The notes below the pieces were generated by a model. That model was not told the origin of the DNA. It made no database searches and was given only the letters and a program-made list of their open reading frames with translations. This document shows positions 20,765 through 55,756 of a DNA stretch of 64,000 bases, in pieces. The DNA lies in the IMG/VR virus record IMGVR_UViG_3300020147_000065, positions 1-64,000 of that record. One strand, given 5' to 3'. Each line of letters begins with the position of its first letter. Within the stretch, counting starts at the first letter, position 1. The position numbers were made by a program, and so were the translations under genes.

Positions 20765-22846
20765 GTGAGTTCTATAGCCGATCTAGTTTATGTTCCTTTT
20801 GCTCTTAAAGAGTTAAAGGAAGATGTTAATATAACAAACCCTGCTCCTGGTGATACCTTACAACGTAGTGCTGAAGGTAAATGGATAAACACACCTATGG
20901 AGCAATTAACTGGTGCCCAAGGACCGCAAGGTGCTCAGGGATCGGCTGGTGCTCAGGGGCCGCAAGGCTCTGCTGGTGCTCAGGGGCCGCAGGGTTATGA
21001 AGGTATAGCTGGAACACAGGGGCCGCAAGGCACACAAGGAAGACAAGGCTTTCAAGGTGTGCAGGGTGCAGTTGGTACACAGGGTACTCAGGGTATAGCC
21101 GGTGCGCAAGGTGCAACTGGTTCACAAGGTACTCAGGGAGTTCAGGGTACTCAGGGTACTCAGGGTACTCAGGGAAGACAAGGATTCCAAGGTGTGCAAG
21201 GCACACAAGGAGTACAGGGTGCCGTAGGTGTACAAGGCCCACAAGGTATAACTGGTTCTCAAGGAGAAACTGGACCACAGGGTACTCAGGGTAGTCGTGG
21301 TTATCAAGGATACCAAGGTTATCAGGGAGCCGCAGGTGCTCAAGGTGTGCAAGGTGCTGTTGGTGTAGCAGGAGATACTGGTCCACAGGGTGCTCAAGGT
21401 TCAACTGGTGCGACCGGAGCGCAAGGTCCACAGGGAACACAGGGTTCTACCGGCGCTCAGGGAACTGCTGGAATTACTGGCCCACAAGGTGTGCAGGGTG
21501 CTGCTGGAACACAAGGTCCACAAGGTTATCAAGGTGCGACCGGGGCCGGAACTCAGGGACCACAAGGTGTGCAAGGTTCTCAGGGTGTTCCCGGTGAAAG
21601 CGCGGATATTGGTGCGCAAGGTCCGCAGGGTGCGACTGGACCACAAGGTGTACAGGGTGCGACTGGACAAGGATTTAACATTGCTAAATCTTATGCATCT
21701 GTTGCCGCCCTAACTGCGGATACTAATCCTTCTGATATACTACCTGGTGAGTTTGCGATTATCTTATCCACGGTTGATGATCCAGACAACTCTAAGTTAT
21801 ATCTCTGGGACGGCGAAGATTATATTTATACCTCTGATCTTTCGGGTGCGGCAGGTATTACCGGACCACAGGGTACACAGGGAGCTACCGGAGCACAGGG
21901 TGTGCAGGGTTCTCAAGGTGTAGCCGGTGCGACTGGTCCACAAGGGGATGCCGGTGAAGCCGGTGCTGCTGGACCACAGGGTGCAGCGGGGGCACAGGGA
22001 CCGCAAGGAACTGCTGGTGCAGCCGGAGAAGCTGGTGAAGCTGGTGCCCAAGGTCCACAAGGATTTCAGGGCGCTGCCGGTGCTCAGGGAGCTACCGGAG
22101 CGCAAGGTTCTGCCGGAGCTACCGGAGCACAGGGACCACAGGGAGACGTTGGTGCTCAAGGATCAACTGGTGCTCAGGGTGCTGCGGGGGCGCAGGGCAC
22201 ACAAGGTGTAGCCGGAGCGCAGGGCGCAGCCGGAGCCGAAGGTCCGCAAGGTAATCAGGGGGCACAAGGTCCACAAGGTTATCAGGGTAGCCAAGGTGTT
22301 GCCGGTGCTCAGGGTCCGCAGGGAACACAAGGTTATCAGGGACTTACTGGTGAAGGAACACAGGGTCCGCAGGGAACACAGGGTCCGCAAGGCGCGTCAG
22401 GTGGAGGAGCAGGTGGAACGGGTGCGTCCATCTCTGTTGTTCAGAATAGTCATGGTTTCGCGGTTGGCGATGTTGTTCGTTTGAGTGGGTCAGCAACATA
22501 CACAAAAGCTTTAGCTGATTCCGCAGCAAACGCTGAAGTAGCGGGTATTGTTTCGGCTGTTGCAGATTCTAACAATTTTACTCTGAGTCTTGTCGGACAG
22601 GTAACCGGTCTAACTGGTCTTTCGGCAGAAACGCTTTACTTTCTGAGTCCAACGGTGGCCGGTGCTATGACATCTACCGAACCAACAGTCACCGGTCAAA
22701 TTAGTAAACCTGTATTTTTGGCAGACACAACAACATCAGGTTTTGTTATCACACAAATGCGCGGATACATTATATCAGATACCGGTGGTGCTGTAGGAGG
22801 ATCATCGGTGGGCGGTAATATTTATCTGAGTCGCAACTTCATTTAA
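20765..22846 (+). CDS. collagen-like (Gly-X-Y) fibre protein
   Basis: two long GXY tracts (GAQ/GPQ/GVQ) split by a globular insert; C-terminal beta domain; GTG start. Confidence 0.92.
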   Translation: MSSIADLVYVPFALKELKEDVNITNPAPGDTLQRSAEGKWINTPMEQLTGAQGPQGAQGSAGAQGPQGSAGAQGPQGYEGIAGTQGPQGTQGRQGFQGVQGAVGTQGTQGIAGAQGATGSQGTQGVQGTQGTQGTQGRQGFQGVQGTQGVQGAVGVQGPQGITGSQGETGPQGTQGSRGYQGYQGYQGAAGAQGVQGAVGVAGDTGPQGAQGSTGATGAQGPQGTQGSTGAQGTAGITGPQGVQGAAGTQGPQGYQGATGAGTQGPQGVQGSQGVPGESADIGAQGPQGATGPQGVQGATGQGFNIAKSYASVAALTADTNPSDILPGEFAIILSTVDDPDNSKLYLWDGEDYIYTSDLSGAAGITGPQGTQGATGAQGVQGSQGVAGATGPQGDAGEAGAAGPQGAAGAQGPQGTAGAAGEAGEAGAQGPQGFQGAAGAQGATGAQGSAGATGAQGPQGDVGAQGSTGAQGAAGAQGTQGVAGAQGAAGAEGPQGNQGAQGPQGYQGSQGVAGAQGPQGTQGYQGLTGEGTQGPQGTQGPQGASGGGAGGTGASISVVQNSHGFAVGDVVRLSGSATYTKALADSAANAEVAGIVSAVADSNNFTLSLVGQVTGLTGLSAETLYFLSPTVAGAMTSTEPTVTGQISKPVFLADTTTSGFVITQMRGYIISDTGGAVGGSSVGGNIYLSRNFI

Positions 22847-23999: not shown

Positions 24000-25130
24000 A
24001 TGGCAAACAGTGTATTACCGGGATTAGCATATCAAGGACCACAGGGTGTTCAGGGTGTTCAGGGTGTTCAGGGAGCACAAGGATACCAGGGAGCACAAGG
24101 ATACCAGGGAGCTACCGGATCAGGTGCTCAGGGACCGCAAGGTGTTCAGGGACCACAGGGGGCTGACGGCGGCGGTGGAGGCGGAAGTGGTAGTGGTGAC
24201 AGCCTTACCATTAATGTCTCACAGACAGCCCACGGTTTTGCTGTTGGTGATCTTGTAAGACACAACGGAACAACTTATGTAAAAGCACAGGCTGACAGTG
24301 CAACAAATGCTAACGTCGCAGGTATGGTTAAAACTGTAACCGACGCTAATAACTTTGTACTTACATTGCCCGGCTCTTATATAACTGGTTTGTCTGGTCT
24401 GACAGCAGGAGAGACATACTTTCTCTCACCGTCATCTGCCGGAGCGATGACGGCTACCGAGCCTTCAACAACTGGACAGATAAGAAAAGTTGTTCTCATT
24501 GCGACCAGCACAACAGCCGGTATTCTTCAATCAGACATTGGCTTTTTGTTACAAACAGCAGTAGCTTATGAGACCACGGTTGCTCCCGGTAAATTTAGAA
24601 CCAGTGGTGCCGTAGTTCAGTTTGGTATTCCCGGCAGAAGTCCAGCGGCGGCGGCTACAACTTTTGCTTTCACAGCCAACCGAATTTATTATGAACCAAT
24701 TATGGTAGAAGATACCATAACACTTGATAGAATTATCGCTGAGGTTACAACATTAATTACATCTTCCACAATTCGTCTTGGTATTTACAATGCTGACGAA
24801 AACTGGCAGCCCACTACTCTTGTATTAGATGCTGGAACCATTGATTCTGCCACCACGGGAGTAAAGACAATTACAATCAACCAGATTCTAACTCGTGGAC
24901 GTTATCTACTTGCGTTGCATAGTGGACATGCACCAACTGTTCGAGCATTGTTGATGGCTGGTTCAATTACTGGACCAATTGCCCCCGCTGTGGGTACTAA
25001 CTCCAATATAGTTCAACTATATAAAGCAAGTCAGGCGTATGCTGCTTATGCTTCCAGTGGAGTTCAATGGGATACAGCAGTGGCAGCCAACACAGCATTT
25101 AGACATGCGGCAATGTTGAGGTGGACATAA
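24000..25130 (+). CDS. collagen-like fibre protein
   Basis: short GXY tract followed by a domain paralogous to the C-terminus of 20765..22846. Confidence 0.85.
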   Translation: MANSVLPGLAYQGPQGVQGVQGVQGAQGYQGAQGYQGATGSGAQGPQGVQGPQGADGGGGGGSGSGDSLTINVSQTAHGFAVGDLVRHNGTTYVKAQADSATNANVAGMVKTVTDANNFVLTLPGSYITGLSGLTAGETYFLSPSSAGAMTATEPSTTGQIRKVVLIATSTTAGILQSDIGFLLQTAVAYETTVAPGKFRTSGAVVQFGIPGRSPAAAATTFAFTANRIYYEPIMVEDTITLDRIIAEVTTLITSSTIRLGIYNADENWQPTTLVLDAGTIDSATTGVKTITINQILTRGRYLLALHSGHAPTVRALLMAGSITGPIAPAVGTNSNIVQLYKASQAYAAYASSGVQWDTAVAANTAFRHAAMLRWT

Positions 25131-25438
25131 TGAATAAGAGATACAACGAAGAGTATGGAATTGGAGGATTTAATCCTTCTCTTCCTGATAATAATCTTGT
25201 GAGTAGGGAAGAAATTCCCTACTCATGGGAGGAAATTCGAGAATTAAGAGAGCCACTTCTTGTGGAAGCGGATATTCTTATTAATCGTGCAACTGATTTG
25301 TCACTCACCGCGGGTAATGTGAATGCAGATTATCTGAAAGCTTTAAGCGAATATCGCATGGCCCTAAGAGACATCACAAAAACATACGAAAATCCCAACG
25401 ATGTTGAGTGGCCCGTTAAGCCGGAGGTAATAGTTTAA
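25130..25438 (+). CDS. phage tail fibre assembly chaperone
   Basis: WEEIRELREPLL.EAD...EYRMALRDIT...VEWPVKP signature; TAATG coupling. Confidence 0.8.
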   Translation: MNKRYNEEYGIGGFNPSLPDNNLVSREEIPYSWEEIRELREPLLVEADILINRATDLSLTAGNVNADYLKALSEYRMALRDITKTYENPNDVEWPVKPEVIV

Positions 25439-26289
25439 TGGCAACTACCGCACTAACACAATCAAATATACGCGGACCACAGGGAACACAAGGCTTTCAG
25501 GGTAATCAGGGAACACAAGGTGTGCAAGGCACCCAAGGATTTCAAGGTAACCAAGGATTTCAAGGATTCCAAGGTAACCAAGGCACTCAGGGAGTGCAGG
25601 GACCACAACCTTCTTTAAACGGCACCTCTACTACTTCCATATTAATGGGTAACGGCACGAAAGTGTTCACAACTCAAGCTAACCTTGCATGGAGTAATGG
25701 ATATAGAATTCGAGTATCACAAACTTCTGATCCATCAGCAAACTACATGGAAGGAGTTGTCTCTTCTTATTCCGATACAACATTAACTGTTACAATAGAT
25801 TATGTTGTAGGAAGCGGAACACTAAGTGATTGGAGCTTTGCTCTTGCGGGAGAAAGAGGCGCTCAGGGAGCAGCCGGAGCAACAGGAGCACAGGGAAGTG
25901 GAGGAGCAGGAACAATGTCTCGTGCAAGCGTAGTTGTTACAACGGCTTCACTTGCTGATCTTGCTACTGAAAATGCTGCGCCCACAATTGCAAAGACCGC
26001 ACTATTACTTTCCGTCCAAACTGATCGTGCGGCATGGGTAAGAGTTTATAATTCGGCGGCGGCTCGGACAGCCGACGCCTCACGTTCAATTGCTGACGAC
26101 CCCGTGGCAAGCAGTGGAGTAGTAGCTGAAATAATTACCACCGGAGCCGAGACAATCAATCTTGCACCACCATATGAAATTTATAGCGCAGAGGCGGTCC
26201 CCTCTGCTAATCTATCTGTCGCTATTCAGAACAGAAGTGGTAGCACATCAACGGTCCAAGTAACATTCACCTATCTGGTATTGGAGTAA
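25438..26289 (+). CDS. collagen-like fibre protein
   Basis: GTQ/GFQ/GNQ tract; STTSILMGNGTKVFTTQ...YMEGVVSSYS...W fibre domain. Confidence 0.85.
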   Translation: MATTALTQSNIRGPQGTQGFQGNQGTQGVQGTQGFQGNQGFQGFQGNQGTQGVQGPQPSLNGTSTTSILMGNGTKVFTTQANLAWSNGYRIRVSQTSDPSANYMEGVVSSYSDTTLTVTIDYVVGSGTLSDWSFALAGERGAQGAAGATGAQGSGGAGTMSRASVVVTTASLADLATENAAPTIAKTALLLSVQTDRAAWVRVYNSAAARTADASRSIADDPVASSGVVAEIITTGAETINLAPPYEIYSAEAVPSANLSVAIQNRSGSTSTVQVTFTYLVLE

Positions 26290-34564: not shown

Positions 34565-34893
34565 TCGTTATCGTCGTCGAGGAAGTCATTCTTTACGGGT
34601 GAAGGAATAGAGGGAATTTCCTGAGTCTTCTTCTCTCTTTCCCTGATAGCCGCAGCAGAGAAATCATCGTCTGTCAATATGAGAAGAGGAATATCATCTA
34701 ATGATGACGGAAAAGTGTGTTTGACCCCTGGTTTGCACATAATCACAATCGAGGAGTCCGTCATTTTGATTCCCCATACTCCCTCCCGATTCATTATCGA
34801 ATTGGAGTATTTCAGTTTCACTTCGGCTATCTGACGATTGTAAGGAGTCGCGCAGATAGTTGGCTGCTTTACGGAGTCTTGTGGAGTTGTCAT
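34555..34893 (-). CDS. hypothetical protein (start uncertain, overlaps endonuclease)
   Basis: protein-like C-terminal half; up to about 200 nt overlap with the endonuclease VII gene. Confidence 0.5.
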   Translation of the reverse strand: MTTPQDSVKQPTICATPYNRQIAEVKLKYSNSIMNREGVWGIKMTDSSIVIMCKPGVKHTFPSSLDDIPLLILTDDDFSAAAIREREKKTQEIPSIPSPVKNDFLDDDNDWL

Positions 34894-35269
34894 AAAAATT
34901 CCCTATTCCCAAATTACAACTTGAACATAGTAAACCGCGTACCTTACCTGTACTATGGTCATGGTCTACACATAGCTGCTTTTCGTGTTTTTGTGGTTTA
35001 AATCCACAGATGGCACAGGAATTATCCTGTGCCTCTAATAATTGTGTATATTCTTCTTCTGTAATTTGACATAGTGGTTCTCCAGGCTTTGTGCGAGAAC
35101 GTATTCGTCTATTAATTATTCTTATGCGGCTTTTGAGTATCTTGTTGCGCTCTCTTGCCTTATCTTCTTTACATTTCTTACAATATGTGTCGTAACCATC
35201 TGAGCTACTATTAGATTTATGGCACGTTAATGGTGTCTTTTCAATGTCGCAAATAGGACAATTAGGCAT
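34694..35269 (-). CDS. endonuclease VII-family HNH (homing) endonuclease
   Basis: CAICG, LCVDHDHSTGKVRGLLCSSCNLGIG, N-terminal Cys-rich domain YCKKC. Confidence 0.9.
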   Translation of the reverse strand: MPNCPICDIEKTPLTCHKSNSSSDGYDTYCKKCKEDKARERNKILKSRIRIINRRIRSRTKPGEPLCQITEEEYTQLLEAQDNSCAICGFKPQKHEKQLCVDHDHSTGKVRGLLCSSCNLGIGNFYDNSTRLRKAANYLRDSLQSSDSRSETEILQFDNESGGSMGNQNDGLLDCDYVQTRGQTHFSVIIR

Positions 35270-35514: not shown

Positions 35515-36033
35515 TCAAGAATAAACATATGCGCGTAATTTTCTTTCGACTTTTTCTCTGGCTCTCCATGAACGAGACTTAACTGTTCCAATAGGTACTT
35601 GTAACTTTGCTGCCGTTTCTTCAACATCCAGATTACCTAAGTAACGTGTAACAAGTATCCGTTGTGAAACAGGACTTAGGGTATCTATTACTTCACCGGC
35701 TAAAACTCTTAACTCCGCAGACTCTACAATCTCATGTGGTAAATCATCAGCAACATCAGTACACGCTGCTATGATTTTATCCATATTCTCACGGTAACGT
35801 AGTTTACGTCTGATAAGATCGCAGCAATAATTCCTTGCTACCGCTTTTACCCATTCACGCATCTTAGTTGTTTCTGTTACTGTATGACGGTTCAACCAAC
35901 AACGTAACAACACATCTTGTTCTGCGTCTTCTATGAAAGCAGGTTCATGTTTTAATATATAGCCGAGCATTAAGCGAACCACGGGTCTATAATCTGCGTA
36001 GTACGCTTCCATTTCTGTTAGCGTTTTTTGCAT
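35515..36033 (-). CDS. ECF-type (sigma24-like) RNA polymerase sigma factor
   Basis: region 2 DAEQDVLLRCW...WVKAVARNYCCDLIRR; region 4 LSPVSQRIL...EETAAKLQVPIGTVKSR. Confidence 0.9.
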   Translation of the reverse strand: MQKTLTEMEAYYADYRPVVRLMLGYILKHEPAFIEDAEQDVLLRCWLNRHTVTETTKMREWVKAVARNYCCDLIRRKLRYRENMDKIIAACTDVADDLPHEIVESAELRVLAGEVIDTLSPVSQRILVTRYLGNLDVEETAAKLQVPIGTVKSRSWRAREKVERKLRAYVYS

Positions 36034-36416
36034 ATCACTTCCCCATCTACTGCAAAGTAGACTTCTTTAGTGAGGCGATCCTTGACTCTCTGATTAATTT
36101 CGATGGTATCTTGGGCGTGTTCCGCTGTCATCGAAGCAGCATACAAACGTTCAAATCCCAAGCGAACAAGTTCAGCCACCTGTTGTTCTGTTGCCTTTTC
36201 GGGTTCAGGAGAAGGTACCGGAAAAGATATTGCGGGGAATGGAAGGTCTTCTACATCAACAATATTTTCTTTTGGTAAAGGGGTTTTAAAGAGGAAGTGA
36301 GGGCGACTGACCTTCGAAAGGTCAGTCGCCACTGTTCTCCCCAGCGGTTTAGGAAAAGGGTATCTGCTGGACATGAATTGCTGCTCCTGGTTTTGGAGTA
36401 TAACCAATAAGTTCAA
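36018..36416 (-). CDS. hypothetical protein
   Basis: ORF in coupled run; start may be downstream. Confidence 0.55.
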   Translation of the reverse strand: MNLLVILQNQEQQFMSSRYPFPKPLGRTVATDLSKVSRPHFLFKTPLPKENIVDVEDLPFPAISFPVPSPEPEKATEQQVAELVRLGFERLYAASMTAEHAQDTIEINQRVKDRLTKEVYFAVDGEVICKKR

Positions 36417-36594
36417 TAGCTAAATCGCCTTCTTCTGGCATTTTAGCACTGATTAGAATTTCACTTCGATCTGGACGAACTTTCTTGCGTCCAAAGGCCA
36501 TCACGTTTGTGCGAGGAGAGAAGATAACGAATATATCGTCTCCGTTTTCAAGCAAAGCTTTCTCTAAATAAGCTCTGGGGATTGAGACTTGCAT
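36349..36594 (-). CDS. hypothetical protein
   Basis: AGGAG RBS. Confidence 0.55.
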   Translation of the reverse strand: MQVSIPRAYLEKALLENGDDIFVIFSPRTNVMAFGRKKVRPDRSEILISAKMPEEGDLAIELIGYTPKPGAAIHVQQIPFS

Positions 36595-36985
36595 AAGACT
36601 CCTGTGGTATATAGTGGTTGTGGACTTTATTTATATCTTCCACGCAAACCTGTGGTAGCTCAGAAACTACACTAAATAACTGTTCGGATTTACTTAGACG
36701 CTGTGGTACTTCACGATAACTCCAGAAAACGTAGTACTCGTCATCCACTGCATCTAATTCCATCCACCAACCGTCACCTACAACAACAAGGTCACAAGCT
36801 GGACCGGTGTAATTTGGGACGTAAGCTGTCTGAGGCAGCTTCATAAATTCATCCCAAGTCACACTAAACTTACCGTCTTTAGAGCCAATCCATTCAATAT
36901 CCTCTGGATTTTTGCAATTGGCGGCTAAATTATATTCGATTTCCTCAACCATATTTATGGTCGGTATTGATTTTTGGTCATTCAT
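36548..36985 (-). CDS. hypothetical protein
   Basis: first gene behind minus-strand promoter. Confidence 0.65.
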   Translation of the reverse strand: MNDQKSIPTINMVEEIEYNLAANCKNPEDIEWIGSKDGKFSVTWDEFMKLPQTAYVPNYTGPACDLVVVGDGWWMELDAVDDEYYVFWSYREVPQRLSKSEQLFSVVSELPQVCVEDINKVHNHYIPQESYASLNPQSLFRESFA

Positions 36986-51903: not shown

Positions 51904-51932
51904 TTGACGCAGGATGGCAGAAATGCTATAAT
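51904..51932 (+). promoter_or_regulatory. sigma70-type leaderless promoter
   Basis: TTGACG-17-TATAAT; ATG at 51940. Confidence 0.8.
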
Positions 51933-51939
51933 GCTGAAT

Positions 51940-52248
51940 ATGAACGAATTAGCTTTGACTTGCTTGATTTTATTTATCATGGGTGCATTGTGGGTTATTT
52001 TCAATACATTGCTTCAATACTTCGTGCTCAAAAAAGAGACACTTGGTATATTTTTAGTGGCTATATTGATTGGTTATATGTGGCCAGGAATTGCTTTTAT
52101 GTCTGTGAGTACCGTATTCACCAAAGGGGCGGACACGATTAGTGTACTTTTTATGTCCTTTGCTTTAGGTTATGCTTTCGCTATGGTAGCGGTACAAAAA
52201 ATTAATCTTGATAAAACGGTAGAGGTTCCCCGTGATCGTCGCTCTTAA
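51940..52248 (+). CDS. three-TM membrane protein
   Basis: hydrophobic helices; start reset behind promoter. Confidence 0.65.
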   Translation: MNELALTCLILFIMGALWVIFNTLLQYFVLKKETLGIFLVAILIGYMWPGIAFMSVSTVFTKGADTISVLFMSFALGYAFAMVAVQKINLDKTVEVPRDRRS

Positions 52249-52669
52249 ACATCCTGATGGTGATTACCTGTTGTTCGACGATCCTTCGGGATCGTCGGAC
52301 GGTAAGACATATCAACACAAGGACAAAATAAAAGCTGCCGGTGGCAAATGGGACGGCACCCGATGGAGAGTCCCAAGCGTCGAGAAATTATCCTTTGTGG
52401 AGAAGTTGTTCGACGTGGAAGTATCAGCCTTCTGTCATATGCCACCACAGGATTATGTTGCAACTGCTTCTGAGGTAAAAAAGAAATCTTTGAAGCTAAC
52501 ATGTTGGGGTTGCGAAAAGAAGCCTAACAAAGGCTTCGTTAAAATAGTGAAGGTTATAGGTGAATCGGTAATTCTCCGACCTGACAATCCACCACAAGAA
52601 GTCAAGCCGGAACCAGAGGATGACTTTCTAACCTCTGATTCACCAAAAGAGTCTGTAGATTTGTGGTAA
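52232..52669 (+). CDS. protein with DUF5710-like domain
   Basis: TYQHKDKIKAAGGKWDG..W. Confidence 0.55.
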   Translation: MIVALKHPDGDYLLFDDPSGSSDGKTYQHKDKIKAAGGKWDGTRWRVPSVEKLSFVEKLFDVEVSAFCHMPPQDYVATASEVKKKSLKLTCWGCEKKPNKGFVKIVKVIGESVILRPDNPPQEVKPEPEDDFLTSDSPKESVDLW

Positions 52670-52965
52670 AGGGTGATCCTATGAAACTGAAAGTTTGGCA
52701 ACCAATTGACCTTGAAGTAAACTGCACACCTGAAGAATTTGTTGATCTCATTGCTGAGATTAGAGATCAATGGGATATTGGACCAGAAGAACCAATTTCT
52801 TTCTCTGATGTTCTTACTTATGGAGCAAAACTTGGCTATGTTACTAATTGTCCACCGGGTTTCTTCATAATGGACAAAGAATTTAAAGGTGTAGCCACAG
52901 AGGAAGAGTTGATTGAGGCCCACGCACTTGATAGGCTCGTGGGAGGTAATCTGCGGCTATGCTAA
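52663..52965 (+). CDS. hypothetical protein
   Basis: coupled ORF. Confidence 0.6.
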   Translation: MVKGDPMKLKVWQPIDLEVNCTPEEFVDLIAEIRDQWDIGPEEPISFSDVLTYGAKLGYVTNCPPGFFIMDKEFKGVATEEELIEAHALDRLVGGNLRLC

Positions 52966-54530
52966 AAGGCACCGAATACGTTGGAATTACAGAAAGAAAA
53001 TGGGGCGAGGTAGCGCAAGCATACCTCGCCTCTATTGTTGAATCCTCCAGTGATGCCATCTTTTCTACATCAAAAGATGGGGTAATTACCACATGGAATG
53101 CTGCCGCACAGCAAATTTTTGGTTATAGTAACCATGAAATTTTAGGTTATCCTGTATCATCCATCATTCCAGAGGGTCATCATATTAATCTGGAAGACAT
53201 TTACGGTGAAATAGTCAATGAAAACAAATCTGTAAGTTATGAATCCTTCATAATGCACAAAAACAAAACTCTTGTGCCAGTATGGATAACTCTATCACCA
53301 ATACGTGATGTTCACGGTAGTATAATTGGTGTCTCTGGTATTGTTCGTGATATGAGCCATCAAAAGAAACTGGAATCAGCTATCGCGGCTATTCACAGAA
53401 CCTTTCAACTGGCTCTATCGGCTTCACCTGACGCTATTTTAATTACAAATCAAGATGGCTGCATCACATACTGGAATGATGGTGCTGCTAATCTATTTGG
53501 TTACCAAGAAAAGGATATTCTTGGCCGACCTGTGAGCCAACTATTACCAAAAGAAACCGCAAGTAAATATGAAGGATGTATCAATAAGATGCTTGATAGC
53601 GGCTTCCCTGATGGAAGCCGCAAAATGGTTGAGATAACGGCCAAAAAGAAAGATGATACATTCTTTCCGGCTGAGGCTTCAATAGCTGTTCTTGATACTG
53701 AGTACGGTAGGCTTTGCTGTGCAATTATTCGTGATATAACAGATCGCTTGAGACAGGAAGAAAAGCTTGTTAAGACTAACGAGGAGATGCAAACCAACTT
53801 AATTCTTGCCCGAAAGGTTCAAGAAGCATTGCTTCCATCCGCCGAAGTTAAACATGAACGTTTTAAATCTTTGACAGTAGCATCAAAATATATTCCTGCT
53901 TCCGACCTTGGAGGGGATTTCTTTGTTTGCCTACCAGTTAAACAAGACACCTTAGGTATCTTTGTTGGTGATGTAATGGGTCACGGAGTTCGTTCTGCCC
54001 TTCTTACTTCAATGCTTTATGCTCTTGTTGAAGAACTTAGTCCAGAAGAAAAAGACCCTTCAATTTTCATGACTCACCTTAATCGTAGCTTCACTCATAT
54101 CATGGAGAAGACCAGTTGTAATATCTTTGCGTCTGGAGTATATGCTCAATTAAATACTACAAACAATATTGCCACAGTAGTAAGTGCTGGGCATCCTGCG
54201 CCGGTAAGGGTTTCAAAAGATGGTAAGGCTGTCTTCCTACGACCATCAGATAATTCTCCTGCTCTCGGTTTAATTAATGATTGGGTATATGGTGGATTAT
54301 CTATAAATTATGAACCTGGTGATAAATTTGTCTTTTACACAGACGGATTAACCGAAGTTGATCCCTCCCGTGGTAAGATTCTCCCTGATGTTGGTTTATT
54401 GGAGTTAATCTCGACCAATGCTAACTTAAAAGCATCTGCATTACTCGAAAGATTACTGGAAGTCTCCAACAAAATGTCTTCTAATGATGAGAGACACGAT
54501 GATATTTGCCTTCTGGCTGTAGAAACTTAG
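52959..54530 (+). CDS. PAS-PAS-PP2C (SpoIIE/RsbU-like) serine phosphatase
   Basis: two PAS/PAC domains (SSSDAI...WNAAAQQIFGY; SPDAIL...WNDGAANLFGY); PP2C LGGDFF, VGDVMGHG, SAGHP, YTDGLTE, DDICLL. Confidence 0.92.
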   Translation: MLKGTEYVGITERKWGEVAQAYLASIVESSSDAIFSTSKDGVITTWNAAAQQIFGYSNHEILGYPVSSIIPEGHHINLEDIYGEIVNENKSVSYESFIMHKNKTLVPVWITLSPIRDVHGSIIGVSGIVRDMSHQKKLESAIAAIHRTFQLALSASPDAILITNQDGCITYWNDGAANLFGYQEKDILGRPVSQLLPKETASKYEGCINKMLDSGFPDGSRKMVEITAKKKDDTFFPAEASIAVLDTEYGRLCCAIIRDITDRLRQEEKLVKTNEEMQTNLILARKVQEALLPSAEVKHERFKSLTVASKYIPASDLGGDFFVCLPVKQDTLGIFVGDVMGHGVRSALLTSMLYALVEELSPEEKDPSIFMTHLNRSFTHIMEKTSCNIFASGVYAQLNTTNNIATVVSAGHPAPVRVSKDGKAVFLRPSDNSPALGLINDWVYGGLSINYEPGDKFVFYTDGLTEVDPSRGKILPDVGLLELISTNANLKASALLERLLEVSNKMSSNDERHDDICLLAVET

Positions 54531-54559: not shown

Positions 54560-54588
54560 TTGACAAACGGGAACGAGTGGTGTACAAT
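54560..54588 (+). promoter_or_regulatory. sigma70-type promoter
   Basis: TTGACA-17-TACAAT. Confidence 0.8.
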
Positions 54589-54604: not shown

Positions 54605-55756
54605 ATGAAACGCACAAACATCTACCTTTCAGACGACCAAAACCGCGAATTAGAAATTCTTGCGAAAGCAGGAGTCTCTTCTGCGGAACATGTCCGCCGC
54701 GCGGTGGATGCTTATCTGCAAAGGCCACACATCAGGAGACAATTAGAAATGTCAACAACAGGCGCAACGCGCACCATCCCGTCCCGTCAATCGGCTCAAT
54801 TAGGCCCACTGACCGTTGTTTTCCATCGTACCATTCGTGTACCACAGGGAAACACTCCGTCCTCTTTACCACCAAGTCGTGGTACTTTTCCTGTCTACAA
54901 GGTTTCTGATCTGGGTTCACTTGCTCTTCCACAGTGGGATCGTGAAGGTTACGTGATTCCTATCAAGGAAACCGAAGCAATGTGGATGGCATTCTCATGT
55001 GCATGGGACAAGCAACCCGTTGCTGTCGCCATCGGTGCTGGTGGAATCAACGCTGTCTCTGGTGAGAAGATGAGCAGGAAGCTTCAAGAGGATGGATATT
55101 TAGTAACTCCACCTCAACCCTGGCTTGATGGGTTTAAGTCACCAGATGGTCATGTTTATCAGTTTGTGGGAACAGAACATAAGGGCGGCGAAGGTCATAC
55201 CGTAGCCGAACAGATTATCGGTGAAGAGTCGGTTTCTGGCGGTCTTGCTTTCTCTGTTTATGAAGCAAAGGAGGGCGCCATTGTTGTTCCCAAACCCTCA
55301 ACACATCTTGAATGCTTTACTATGTCTATGGATAGTGACATTAAAAGTTTCTCTCCGGCAGCAGCATCTTTATCTTCGTCTCCAAGACGTATGAGAATGA
55401 TGCGTGGTAATGAATACAGTCAACCAGACGTTCAGAAATGTGCAACGCGTGGGCCTGTGGAAATGGGTCTTGGACGTGGTGGAGCTATCGAACAGAAGGT
55501 TTATCCTGATCCTCACGGATTATCCGCGTGGAAGGCCGAACCATCTGCTGTTGCTGTAGTATATCTTATTAGTGAACGTGAGTTTAATGCTCTTCTTGGG
55601 CTACCCACGGGTGACGTTGCTTCTACAGACAATACTTCTGGACCATACTTCAAAACTCAGGATAAACATCTTGCCGACACAGAAGGCAGCGAGAAATTCG
55701 AGAAAGTCAAAGCTGTTCCAGTCGGTGCGAAAGCTAAGCTCTTTCCGGGTGACTAA
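54605..55756 (+). CDS. ribbon-helix-helix domain fused to a conserved uncharacterised domain
   Basis: MKRTNIYLSDDQ...SAEHVRRAVDAYL (RHH); FHRTIRVP, LPPSRGTFP, EAMW, PQPWLDG, TVAEQ..GEE..GG; internal AGGAG + ATG 54749. Confidence 0.75.
   Translation: MKRTNIYLSDDQNRELEILAKAGVSSAEHVRRAVDAYLQRPHIRRQLEMSTTGATRTIPSRQSAQLGPLTVVFHRTIRVPQGNTPSSLPPSRGTFPVYKVSDLGSLALPQWDREGYVIPIKETEAMWMAFSCAWDKQPVAVAIGAGGINAVSGEKMSRKLQEDGYLVTPPQPWLDGFKSPDGHVYQFVGTEHKGGEGHTVAEQIIGEESVSGGLAFSVYEAKEGAIVVPKPSTHLECFTMSMDSDIKSFSPAAASLSSSPRRMRMMRGNEYSQPDVQKCATRGPVEMGLGRGGAIEQKVYPDPHGLSAWKAEPSAVAVVYLISEREFNALLGLPTGDVASTDNTSGPYFKTQDKHLADTEGSEKFEKVKAVPVGAKAKLFPGD

What the first reader, a model, noticed from the sequence alone, without database searches (positions are those of the whole stretch)
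52959..54530. Phage-encoded PAS-PAS-PP2C sensor phosphatase alongside a phage ECF sigma factor
Seen: a complete RsbU/RsbP-like architecture with intact metal-binding Asp motifs, AT-rich like the neighbouring genes and carrying a copy of the dispersed motif (54367), suggesting long residence. An ECF sigma lies at 35515-36033. Established: PAS-PP2C proteins control partner-switching of stress sigma factors (Bacillus RsbP/RsbU). Inference: the phage senses host redox or energy state and rewires anti-sigma switching, either to control host stress or dormancy or to time its own sigma.
Basis: partly seen in the sequence, partly recalled or inferred. Interest (0 to 1): 0.65.

Follow-up and report, generated by a model that had tools for sequence, protein, structure and literature searches.

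The report
Jumbo phage carries sensor protein phosphatase
A 221-kb phage genome carries an intact, long-resident gene for a two-PAS-domain sensor fused to an RsbU/SpoIIE-type protein phosphatase. This bacterial switch enzyme is almost never seen in viruses, and it probably lets the phage tamper with its host's phospho-signalling circuits.

Summary
ORF 52959-54530 (+) encodes a 523-aa PAS-PAS-PP2C protein (Pfam SpoIIE, E = 4.5e-44). All invariant metal-binding residues are present and the AlphaFold model is confident (pLDDT 88.5). It matches the RsbU-type phosphatases Rv1364c, P. aeruginosa RssB and SpoIIE.

The gene sits 53 kb inside a genuine 221-kb jumbo-phage record. It has the phage's own GC and codon usage, the phage's dispersed DNA motif and a near-consensus sigma-70 promoter, so it is not a chimera. 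Its nearest relatives are REC-PAS-PAS-PP2C proteins of Verrucomicrobiota, at 38% identity or less. The phage copy lacks the receiver domain and sits on a very long branch.

I found no genuine viral relative in GenBank phages, IMG/VR or PHROGs. The phage encodes no STAS protein, RsbW-type kinase, Hanks kinase or receiver. It has one ECF-type sigma, 17 kb away in a separate operon.

Best reading (about 0.45): an early-expressed, signal-gated phosphatase that dephosphorylates host STAS-type partner-switch proteins. Redox or energy sensing is unsupported, because the FixL haem His is Tyr and the LOV Cys is Val. Control of the phage's own sigma is also unsupported. It is a new member of a known enzyme kind in an unusual carrier. 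The substrate, ligand, host and expression remain untested.

The parts
51904..51932 (+). Near-consensus sigma-70-type promoter (TTGACG-17-TATAAT with an upstream TG) at the head of the four-gene unit that ends with the phosphatase.
   Evidence: It is one of 63 sites in the genome matching at least 11 of 12 positions, against about 4.7 in simulated sequence.
51904..52248 (+). First ORF of the unit, a small hydrophobic (multi-pass membrane) protein. The real start is probably an internal ATG downstream of the promoter.
   Evidence: translation. It has no Pfam, PHROG or PADLOC hit.
52232..52669 (+). ORF of 145 aa that overlaps the preceding ORF. Function unknown.
   Evidence: No family hits.
52663..52965 (+). 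ORF of 100 aa (possibly 94 aa, starting at 52681) whose stop overlaps the phosphatase start codon, which suggests translational coupling. There is no sign that it is a STAS protein.
   Evidence: No family hits. The Atlas search gave only weak viral 'hypothetical' leads, and the Atlas model has pLDDT 0.51.
52959..54530 (+). PAS-PAS-PP2C sensor phosphatase gene (523 aa, P0001).
53025..53354 (+). PAS domain 1 (aa 23-132).
   Evidence: Pfam. The model has strands and helices at aa 33-131.
53427..53744 (+). PAS domain 2 (aa 157-262). It is the nearest sequence relative of the FixL haem PAS, but has Tyr204 in place of the haem-ligating His.
53739..53831 (+). Long alpha-helical linker (aa 261-291) joining PAS2 to the phosphatase. 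It contains the conserved A284, Q288 and P293.
   Evidence: Model and conservation. The linker mechanism is described in PMC12143880.
53874..54524 (+). PP2C (SpoIIE-type) catalytic domain (aa 306-522). The metal-binding residues are D320, D338, D462 and D514/D515. The switch helices are aa 344-363 and 367-385. V323 and Y354 are unusual substitutions.
54367..54378 (+). One copy of the phage's dispersed DNA motif CCCGTGG-N-T-R-G-C, inside the PP2C coding region.
   Evidence: One copy in 1.57 kb equals the genome-wide density (0.98 expected), against about 0.1 expected from base composition (my arithmetic from the genome-wide figure).
54560..54588 (+). A second sigma-70-type promoter just after the phosphatase stop codon. 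It marks the end of the unit and drives the next gene (RHH-like N-terminus, real start near 54605).
35515..36033 (-). The phage's only sigma factor. It is ECF-type (regions 2 and 4 only) and sits in its own operon behind a sigma-70-type promoter at 37032-37004. I found no functional link to the phosphatase.

Best explanation
Shown: the gene encodes a full-length sensor phosphatase of the RsbU/RsbP/SpoIIE branch of the PP2C (PPM) family. Its layout is N-terminal helix, PAS1, helix, PAS2, long helical linker, PP2C. Every conserved metal-binding residue is in place. It is a native, compositionally ameliorated gene of a divergent 221-kb jumbo phage. It lies behind a near-consensus host-type sigma-70 promoter, as the last gene of an overlapping four-gene unit. 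Its closest relatives are REC-PAS-PAS-PP2C proteins of Verrucomicrobiota. The phage copy is collinear with them but lacks the receiver domain.

Inferred: host RNA polymerase transcribes the gene early in infection. The protein dimerises. A signal received by the PAS pair passes through the helical linker to the alpha1/alpha2 switch helices of the phosphatase and sets its Mn/Mg-dependent activity, as described for RsbU and RsbP. Having lost the receiver, the enzyme no longer answers to a host histidine kinase.

The phage encodes no STAS protein, RsbW-type kinase, Hanks kinase or receiver. The substrate is therefore most likely a host phospho-protein, and most probably a phosphorylated STAS-type (RsbV-like) partner-switch protein. 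Removing that phosphate would flip a host partner switch, either releasing or sequestering a sigma factor or another output, to the phage's benefit.

The ligand, the exact target and the direction of the effect are unknown.
For: - Family and active site: Pfam SpoIIE at 151 bits plus two PAS domains. Eight invariant catalytic-core columns are kept.
- Structure: the model has pLDDT 88.5 with a 31-residue linker helix. The PP2C half matches the Rv1364c RsbU domain (rmsd 3.4 A), P. aeruginosa RssB (TMt 0.77-0.79) and SpoIIE. NCBIfam's nearest named phosphatases are the partner-switch enzymes RssB (Pseudomonas) and SiaA.
- Phage identity of the contig: the virus record is 221,108 bp with a CheckV completeness of 89%. 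It carries RIIA, tail fibres, DnaB and a thymidylate synthase, plus ribonucleotide reductase, DNA polymerase and a terminase, and 36 tRNAs.
- Native gene: GC, GC3 and codon usage are phage-typical, while the bacterial homologues average 61.6% GC. The motif density equals the genome's. The ORFs overlap end to end.
- Early expression class: 63 consensus sigma-70 promoters against about 4.7 simulated. One lies at 51904, and they are almost absent from the 100-150 kb structural block.
- Origin: the top PP2C hits are 35-37% identical, and the top-scoring hits that carry a name are Verrucomicrobiota. About 76 of the 80 best species-representative loci are Verrucomicrobiota. The tree places the phage copy in a clade with SH-aLRT 99, on a terminal branch of 1.84 against a median of 0.24. 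The protein is collinear from residue 12 to 522 with a REC-PAS-PAS-PP2C protein.
- No phage-encoded partners: STAS, STAS_2, HATPase_c_2, Pkinase and Response_reg are all absent.
- Substrates exist in the candidate host phylum: 2-5 STAS_2 domains per genome, and complete operons with a SpoIIE-type phosphatase (REC-linked in L103), an RsbW-like kinase and a STAS protein in two of five genomes.
- Mechanism: the linker and switch-element mechanism, and its generality across PAS, REC, GAF and HAMP sensor-phosphatases, are described in PMC12143880.
Against: - No substrate has been identified. The host is inferred only from the phylogeny of this one gene.
- The closest bacterial clade is itself uncharacterised and is almost always an 'orphan'. 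Only 2 of 83 loci have even a weak STAS-like ORF within 6 kb. Its own targets are therefore assumed, not known.
- Two conserved positions are unique to the phage copy. V323 is D, H or N in most homologues. Y354 is Arg in 112 of 128 homologues and lies in switch helix alpha1. Either could alter regulation or specificity.
- Expression is only predicted from a promoter match.
- The docking test with a verrucomicrobial STAS protein gave no verdict.
- The gene is a singleton. No related phage is available to show that it is conserved.
Confidence: 0.45

Rival explanations
1. Counter-defence or general takeover phosphatase. The enzyme removes Ser/Thr phosphates placed on host or phage proteins by host Hanks-type or other kinases, for example kinase-based abortive-infection systems. 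It does not act on a STAS partner switch. The PAS domains merely tune its activity.
For: The phage has no partner-switch components of its own. The nearest bacterial clade is not linked to STAS or RsbW genes. The unique V323 and Y354 substitutions could reflect a changed specificity. That kinase-based anti-phage defence exists is general knowledge, not tested here.
Against: To my knowledge, all characterised members of the SpoIIE/RsbU subfamily act on STAS or STAS-like switch proteins (PMC12143880 for the general stress response phosphatases). No PADLOC family matches the protein or its neighbours. No phage kinase or kinase-related gene was found.
Confidence: 0.2
2. Phage-internal regulator. 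The phosphatase acts on a phage protein, such as one of the co-transcribed small ORFs (52232-52669, 52663-52965) or an unrecognised anti-sigma for the phage ECF sigma at 35515-36033. In this way it would time the switch to late transcription.
For: The 100-aa ORF is translationally coupled to the phosphatase and has the size of a STAS protein. The phage has one sigma factor, and its structural block lacks sigma-70 promoters, so a sigma-driven late switch is plausible.
Against: No STAS, RsbW or anti-sigma signature exists anywhere in the 221 kb, either by Pfam six-frame search or by phmmer with verrucomicrobial STAS and RsbW queries. The Atlas search of the 100-aa ORF gives no STAS-like lead. 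The sigma is ECF-type, a class not known to be governed by RsbW-type switching (my knowledge). It keeps an acidic region 2.2. It lies 16.9 kb away on the other strand, in a different early operon.
Confidence: 0.1
3. Passenger or artefact. The gene is host DNA joined to the phage by mis-assembly, or a decaying, unexpressed hitch-hiker without function.
For: The gene is a singleton with no viral relatives. Coverage and expression could not be checked. The weak 'phage' hits in GenBank do turn out to be host DNA or unverified records.
Against: The gene lies 53 kb from one contig end and 167 kb from the other, between phage genes. Its GC (40%) and codon usage match the phage, not the homologues at about 62% GC. 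It carries the phage motif at the genome's density and is flanked by phage-type promoters. The ORFs overlap end to end. The reading frame is intact over 523 codons, with all catalytic residues conserved despite at least 62% sequence divergence from every relative, which implies purifying selection.
Confidence: 0.05

Closest known systems
Bacillus subtilis RsbP (PAS, coiled-coil linker, PP2C; energy-stress activator of sigma-B)
   Same: A PAS sensor joined by a long helical linker to a SpoIIE-type PP2C domain with the same four metal-binding motifs. The alpha1/alpha2 switch helices are present (mechanism in PMC12143880).
   Different: The phage protein has two PAS domains. I did not look for an RsbQ-like partner. 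The phage genome has no RsbV, RsbW or sigma-B-type sigma. Sequence similarity is only at family level.
Verrucomicrobiota REC-PAS-PAS-SpoIIE proteins (about 666 aa, uncharacterised; e.g. P0121, and P0138 from Pedosphaera sp.)
   Same: These are the nearest relatives. They are collinear with the phage protein over residues 12-522, with 35-38% identity in the PP2C domain, and they fall in the same clade with SH-aLRT 99. Like the phage gene, they are usually not next to STAS or RsbW genes.
   Different: The phage copy lacks the N-terminal receiver domain. It has 40% GC against about 62%, and a terminal branch roughly 7-8 times the median. It carries the unique V323 and Y354.
Mycobacterium tuberculosis Rv1364c (RsbU domain) and Pseudomonas aeruginosa RssB (REC-PP2C)
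   Same: These are the best solved structural matches for the catalytic half: 3ke6 at rmsd 3.4 A and 26% identity, and 3es2/3f79 at TMt 0.77-0.79.
   Different: Rv1364c is fused to its own RsbW and STAS domains. RssB uses a receiver domain. The phage protein has neither feature.
FixL tandem PAS sensor (8js5)
   Same: It is the best structural match for the PAS pair (TMt 0.65-0.68) and the best PDB sequence match for PAS2 (E = 3e-13).
   Different: The proximal haem His is Tyr204 in the phage protein, and the output is a phosphatase rather than a histidine kinase.
Other viral signalling proteins: PAS histidine kinases of uncultured Caudovirales and Agrobacterium jumbo phage Atu_ph07, the possible PP2C A0A8S5RZE9 of Myoviridae sp. 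ctNQV2, and eukaryote-type PP2Cs of giant viruses
   Same: They show that single PAS or PP2C modules do occur sporadically in viruses.
   Different: None covers both halves; the best TM-score normalised to the query is 0.38. None was detectable by sequence in GenBank phages, IMG/VR or PHROGs.

Membership tests
PPM/PP2C phosphatases, SpoIIE subfamily (Pfam PF07228) | Profile match above the curated threshold. | tested here: met
   151.1 bits against a cut-off of 25, E = 4.5e-44, covering profile positions 2-190 of 192. The six-frame search gives 151.8 bits.
PPM/PP2C phosphatases, SpoIIE subfamily (Pfam PF07228) | Four metal-coordinating acidic motifs (GGD, GDVxGHG, TDG, DD). | tested here: met
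   G319/D320, D338/G341, D462/G463 and D514/D515 occupy columns that are 96-100% conserved in 128 homologues.
PPM/PP2C phosphatases, SpoIIE subfamily (Pfam PF07228) | PP2C fold resembling solved bacterial SpoIIE-type enzymes. | tested here: met
   The model has pLDDT 88.5. Foldseek matches: 3ke6 (rmsd 3.4 A), 3es2/3f79 (TMt 0.77-0.79), 3pu9 (rmsd 2.8 A) and 5ucg.
PPM/PP2C phosphatases, SpoIIE subfamily (Pfam PF07228) | Mn/Mg-dependent phospho-Ser/Thr phosphatase activity. | not testable with these tools
   This needs a biochemical assay.
Partner-switching module (RsbU/RsbP with RsbV and RsbW) | N-terminal sensor domain coupled to the phosphatase by a helical linker and switch helices. | tested here: met
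   PAS1, PAS2, helix 261-291, then helices 344-363 and 367-385 in the model. The architecture is as described in PMC12143880.
Partner-switching module (RsbU/RsbP with RsbV and RsbW) | A cognate STAS-domain substrate (RsbV-like) encoded with the phosphatase. | tested here: not met
   There is no STAS or STAS_2 match at E <= 1 in the 221-kb genome. phmmer with two verrucomicrobial STAS proteins gave no hit. The neighbours show no STAS signal. The record is only about 89% complete.
Partner-switching module (RsbU/RsbP with RsbV and RsbW) | An RsbW-type serine kinase / anti-sigma factor encoded with it. | tested here: not met
   The only HATPase_c_2 match scores 11 bits (E = 0.045), and I read the ORF's sequence as a secreted RlpA-like protein, so I treat it as chance. 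phmmer gave no hit.
Partner-switching module (RsbU/RsbP with RsbV and RsbW) | Such substrates and kinases exist in the presumed host lineage. | tested here: met
   All five Verrucomicrobiota genomes that carry the related PP2C have 2-5 STAS_2 domains. Two of them have adjacent RsbW-like and STAS genes next to a SpoIIE phosphatase (L103, L104). The host itself has not been identified.
FixL/DosP-type haem PAS sensor | A proximal His in the F-alpha helix that ligates haem. | tested here: not met
   The FixL proximal His (in ...RSRHDSY...) aligns with Tyr204 (...ASKYEGC...), and PAS2 contains no His at all (sequence).
LOV (flavin) photosensor PAS | The adduct-forming Cys in the GXNCRFLQ motif. | tested here: not met
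   The corresponding positions read GYPVSS (V66) and GRPVSQ (V192). The YtvA-family model scores 35.8 bits against a cut-off of 250. Placing the motif against the LOV consensus rests on my own knowledge.
ECF (group 4) sigma factors, for the gene at 35515-36033 | A two-domain sigma (regions 2 and 4 only) matching the ECF superfamily model. | tested here: met
   172 aa. Sigma70_r2 and Sigma70_r4/r4_2 are above their cut-offs. TIGR02937 scores 68.1 bits against a cut-off of 42.9. phrog_1740 matches at 2e-19.
ECF (group 4) sigma factors, for the gene at 35515-36033 | A co-transcribed cognate anti-sigma factor. | tested here: inconclusive
   The neighbouring ORFs are 36018-36416 (no family), 36548-36985 (PHROGs of unknown function) and 34694-35269 (endonuclease VII).

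The most novel reading that the evidence does not exclude
This would be the first viral effector of bacterial partner-switching signalling. A jumbo phage, probably of a Verrucomicrobiota host, long ago captured a host sensor-phosphatase and shed its receiver domain, so that host two-component control is lost. It now expresses the enzyme early, to read an intracellular cue through its PAS pair and to dephosphorylate host STAS switch proteins. This would reprogramme a host sigma factor or stress output, or block a stress or abortive response. The unique Y354 in the switch helix might bias the enzyme towards the active state.
Probability: 0.3. Interest if true: 0.75.

Novelty: new member of a known kind. 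Interest (0 to 1): 0.5.

Why it matters
Phages are known to redirect host transcription with their own sigma factors, anti-sigma factors and ADP-ribosyltransferases. A virus-borne, ligand-gated RsbU/SpoIIE-type phosphatase has not turned up in 50,697 GenBank phage records, in PHROGs, in motif scans of 2.9 million IMG/VR contigs, or in a 224-genome jumbo-phage survey.

If it acts on host STAS proteins, it would add partner-switching networks to the list of host circuits that viruses hijack. Those networks control general stress responses, biofilm formation, secretion and development in many phyla.

It would also give a natural 'receiver-less' variant for studying how PAS signals reach the PP2C switch element. 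In addition, it is a rare functional handle on phages of Verrucomicrobiota, a poorly studied host group.

If it proves to be just an orphan accessory gene, the finding is a well-documented curiosity in a single uncultured phage.

Tried and rejected
- Complex prediction of the PP2C domain with a verrucomicrobial STAS protein (L103) gave a score of 0.00 and no verdict. It is not evidence either way.
Environment, coverage and expression therefore could not be examined. I did not try to reach the same end by another tool, and read laying was not used.
- IMG/VR scans with P0001, with the nearby DnaB helicase and with two PP2C alignments (A1, A4) found no viral relative. These scans depend on exact peptide patterns, so distant relatives could be missed. 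A broader alignment (A3) was too diverse for the tool.
- tblastn against GenBank phages gave four weak hits. OQ658365 matches beyond the integrase, among host genes. The two Staphylococcus records are UNVERIFIED_ORG. I did not examine the fourth hit, which covers only the PAS region. None of the three examined is a usable precedent.
- The weak HATPase_c_2 hit at 75.9 kb was rejected as chance. It lies in an ORF whose sequence I read as a secreted RlpA-like protein.
- Atlas searches of the 100-aa upstream ORF and the 383-aa downstream ORF gave no STAS or anti-sigma lead.
- PADLOC found no defence-family match for the operon.
- The word search with the phage sigma found a single relative at 34% identity, so it gave no clue to the host.
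- The careful maximum-likelihood tree did not finish. I used the quick IQ-TREE tree.
- The large representative-protein search was not used. The word search and family scans had already settled family membership, and close relatives would have been found by shared words.
- No alternative genetic code was invoked.
Full report
**What is there**

It has an ATG start and encodes 523 residues. Only three open codons lie upstream, so no further N-terminal domain can be encoded in frame. Pfam finds two PAS domains (aa 23-132 and 157-262) and a SpoIIE-type PP2C domain (aa 329-522; 151 bits against a cut-off of 25).

I cut 128 homologous PP2C domains out of the database hits and aligned them. Eight columns of the catalytic core are 96-100% conserved: G319, D320, D338, G341, D462, G463, D514 and D515. 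The phage protein keeps all of them.

An AlphaFold2 model built on 56 collinear homologues is confident (mean pLDDT 88.5). It shows an N-terminal helix, PAS1, a helix, PAS2, a 31-residue helix (aa 261-291) and the PP2C fold. Against solved structures, the catalytic half matches the RsbU domain of Rv1364c (rmsd 3.4 A), P. aeruginosa RssB (TMt 0.77-0.79) and SpoIIE. The PAS pair matches the FixL tandem PAS (TMt 0.65-0.68).

**Is it really phage DNA?**

The window is the first 64 kb of a 221,108-bp IMG/VR virus record with an estimated completeness of 89%. The record carries:
- RIIA, collagen-like tail fibres, a DnaB helicase and a thymidylate synthase;
- ribonucleotide reductase, a DNA polymerase and a large terminase, and an ORF at 74.1-75.0 kb that I read from its sequence as RecA-like;
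- 36 tRNA genes.

Most large structural ORFs have no PHROG match, so this is a very divergent jumbo phage.

The phosphatase gene lies 53 kb from one end and 167 kb from the other. Its GC (40.0%) and GC3 (30%) are within about one standard deviation of 91 phage genes. Its codon usage ranks 7th of 18 among genes of similar length. The PP2C-coding DNA of the bacterial relatives averages 61.6% GC and 74% GC3.

The gene contains one copy of the phage's dispersed motif. The core CCCGTGG occurs 138 times against about 13.5 expected, and the extended form is CCCGTGG-N-T-R-G-C. That is the genome-wide density.

The gene is the last of four end-to-end overlapping ORFs (51904-54530). These lie behind a near-consensus sigma-70 promoter at 51904-51932, and a second such promoter follows directly after its stop codon. 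Sites matching the promoter consensus at 11 of 12 positions or better number 63 in the genome, against about 4.7 in simulated sequence. They are nearly absent from the 100-150 kb structural block.

A prophage/host chimera or a recent capture is therefore very unlikely. The promoter class suggests transcription by host RNA polymerase, meaning early or middle expression. That last step is inference.

**Where it came from**

A word-indexed search of 5.8 billion proteins found no close relative. The PAS half reaches 33-37% identity to PAS histidine kinases. Full-length collinear hits are 25-28% identical.

Searching the PP2C domain alone gave 35-37% identity to REC-PAS-PAS-SpoIIE proteins of about 666 aa. 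The top-scoring hits that carry a name are from Pedosphaera, Chthoniobacter and Rubritalea; weaker named hits are mostly Actinomycetota.

A scan of one genome per species returned 80 best loci, of which about 76 are Verrucomicrobiota, none above 38% identity. That scan was keyed on the peptide DVMGHGVR, so it is biased towards this clade.

In a quick maximum-likelihood tree the phage domain falls inside a clade with SH-aLRT 99 that is 76/83 Verrucomicrobiota. It is unresolved at the base of that clade. Its terminal branch is 1.84 substitutions per site against a median of 0.24.

Pairwise alignment shows collinearity from residue 12 to 522 with such a REC-PAS-PAS-PP2C protein. The phage copy therefore simply lacks the receiver, and no receiver domain exists anywhere in the phage genome.

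My reading is an old acquisition from, or a long co-evolution with, a verrucomicrobial-type lineage, followed by loss of the receiver. The host assignment rests on this single gene and is only a lead.

**What it could act on**

Six-frame searches of the whole phage genome found none of the following:
- STAS or STAS_2 domains;
- a credible RsbW-type kinase: one 11-bit hit, in an ORF I read as a secreted RlpA-like protein;
- a Hanks-type kinase;
- any other PAS domain.

Only one sigma factor was found. phmmer with two verrucomicrobial STAS proteins and two RsbW proteins also found nothing in the phage.

The three co-transcribed small ORFs and the downstream RHH-like gene match no Pfam, NCBIfam, PHROG or PADLOC family. 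The language-model and structure look-up gave no STAS-like lead.

By contrast, all five verrucomicrobial genomes that carry the related phosphatase have 2-5 STAS_2 domains and 1-8 SpoIIE phosphatases. Two of them have textbook operons in which a SpoIIE-type phosphatase (REC-linked in L103, with a longer sensor N-terminus in L104) sits beside an RsbW-like kinase (143-147 aa) and a STAS protein (117-136 aa).

The bacterial clade nearest the phage enzyme is itself almost always unlinked to such genes. Only 2 of 83 loci have a weak STAS-like ORF within 6 kb. That pattern fits many sensor phosphatases converging on a few switch proteins, but it also means the clade's substrate is assumed, not known.

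**Mechanism**

The generally accepted model for this enzyme class is set out in eLife 2025, PMC12143880. Sensor domains (PAS, REC, GAF or HAMP) control a dimeric PPM phosphatase through a coiled-coil linker. The linker acts on the alpha1/alpha2 switch element and so on metal binding. The active enzyme dephosphorylates an RsbV-type STAS protein, which then captures the RsbW anti-sigma kinase.

The phage protein has all the structural parts of that scheme. I therefore propose that it is an early-expressed, PAS-gated phosphatase, freed from host two-component control, that flips a host partner switch.

Two substitutions are peculiar to it. V323 replaces the D, H or N that follows the GGDF motif in most homologues. 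Y354 replaces an Arg found in 112 of 128 homologues, and lies in switch helix alpha1. They may alter regulation or specificity. This is speculation.

**What is not supported**

The suggestion that the PAS domains sense redox or energy state has no specific support:
- PAS2 is the best PDB sequence match to the FixL haem domain (E = 3e-13), but the haem-ligating His aligns with Tyr204, and PAS2 has no His at all.
- The LOV adduct Cys position is Val in both PAS domains.

The suggested link to the phage's own sigma also has no support:
- The sigma is ECF-type (TIGR02937 at 68 bits) and is itself a near-orphan.
- It keeps an acidic region 2.2.
- It has no recognisable anti-sigma neighbour.
- It lies 16.9 kb away on the opposite strand, in a separate operon with its own sigma-70-type promoter.

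**Novelty**

The protein is an ordinary member of a known enzyme class, and PAS-PAS-SpoIIE proteins without a receiver also exist in bacteria (for example P0125 and P0045). What is unusual is the carrier:
- P0001 matches no PHROG family, even at E < 0.01.
- tblastn against 50,697 GenBank phage records gave four weak hits. The three I examined turned out to be host flank or unverified contigs, and the fourth covers only the PAS region.
- Four pattern-based scans of IMG/VR found no viral relative.
- A survey of 224 jumbo phages does not mention PP2C, SpoIIE or PAS domains.
- Further literature searches found no report.

The viral structure library does hold a few phage PAS proteins, including one from Agrobacterium jumbo phage Atu_ph07. 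It also holds one possible phage PP2C (A0A8S5RZE9) and eukaryote-type PP2Cs of giant viruses, but nothing that covers both halves.

I rate it a new member of a known kind in an unusual context, of moderate interest.

**Limits**

The docking test gave no verdict. The host is unknown. The record is about 89% complete, so a partner gene in the missing part cannot be excluded. The phage is a singleton, so conservation among related phages cannot be assessed.

Noticed in passing
Whole genome; in the window e.g. 7899, 10116, 10552, 32663, 42246, 45485, 50347, 54367, 63085: A dispersed, non-palindromic motif, CCCGTGG-N-T-R-G-C. The core occurs 138 times against about 13.5 expected, and G is at +10 in 128 of 138 copies. 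It is spread evenly (about one per 1.6 kb) over both strands, all reading frames and intergenic DNA. It therefore looks like a DNA-level signal, perhaps a modification, nicking or recombination site, rather than a coding feature.
   Followed up: partly
L013/L014 (genome 195.3-216.6 kb); suppressor-like tRNAs at genome 208926-208998 and 216482-216555: There is a cluster of 36 tRNA genes. It includes one with anticodon CTA (it would read amber) and one with TCA (it would read opal). Coding density under the standard code is 91% and the phosphatase ORF is open under it, so I invoked no recoding. Stop-codon read-through in some late genes was not examined.
   Followed up: no
Whole genome; in the window at 83, 1304, 4400, 6654, 9856, 34551(-), 37032(-), 37469, 43589(-), 48818(-), 49942(-), 51904, 54560, 57035, 59451: There are 63 near-perfect TTGACA-17-TATAAT promoters, against about 4.7 in simulated sequence. 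They are densest in the tRNA region and almost absent from the 100-150 kb structural block. This suggests a host-RNAP early/middle class and a separate late class, possibly driven by the phage's ECF-type sigma.
   Followed up: partly
window 35515-36033 (-): The phage's single ECF-type sigma factor is almost an orphan. The word search of 5.8 billion proteins found only one relative, at 34% identity. It sits between an unknown 132-aa ORF and an endonuclease VII gene.
   Followed up: partly
window 20765-22846, 24000-25130, 25438-26289 (+): The first two ORFs match tail-fibre PHROGs, and all three spans carry collagen-like Gly-X-Y repeats (9-nt periodic DNA repeats, 40-70 copies).
   Followed up: no
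window 54605-55756 (+): The gene after the phosphatase has a ribbon-helix-helix-like N-terminus (weak, E = 0.006). Its roughly 320-residue body structurally resembles clusters of uncharacterised, mostly actinobacterial proteins (TM 0.62-0.66). Function unknown.
   Followed up: partly
L103 2345-4404 (-) and L104 1860-4779 (+): Verrucomicrobiota MAGs carry complete partner-switching operons: in L103, a REC-linked SpoIIE phosphatase, an RsbW-like kinase and a STAS protein; in L104, an RsbW-like kinase, a STAS protein and a 635-aa sensor-SpoIIE phosphatase. To my knowledge these systems have not been characterised in this phylum.
   Followed up: partly
L105 (GenBank OQ658365.1, 'Pseudomonas phage sp.'): The deposited 'complete phage genome' extends past its integrase into host genes (transaldolase, tRNA-dihydrouridine synthase and a PP2C-like stretch). 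Apparent phage hits to host-type genes in this record are artefacts of prophage boundary calling.
   Followed up: partly
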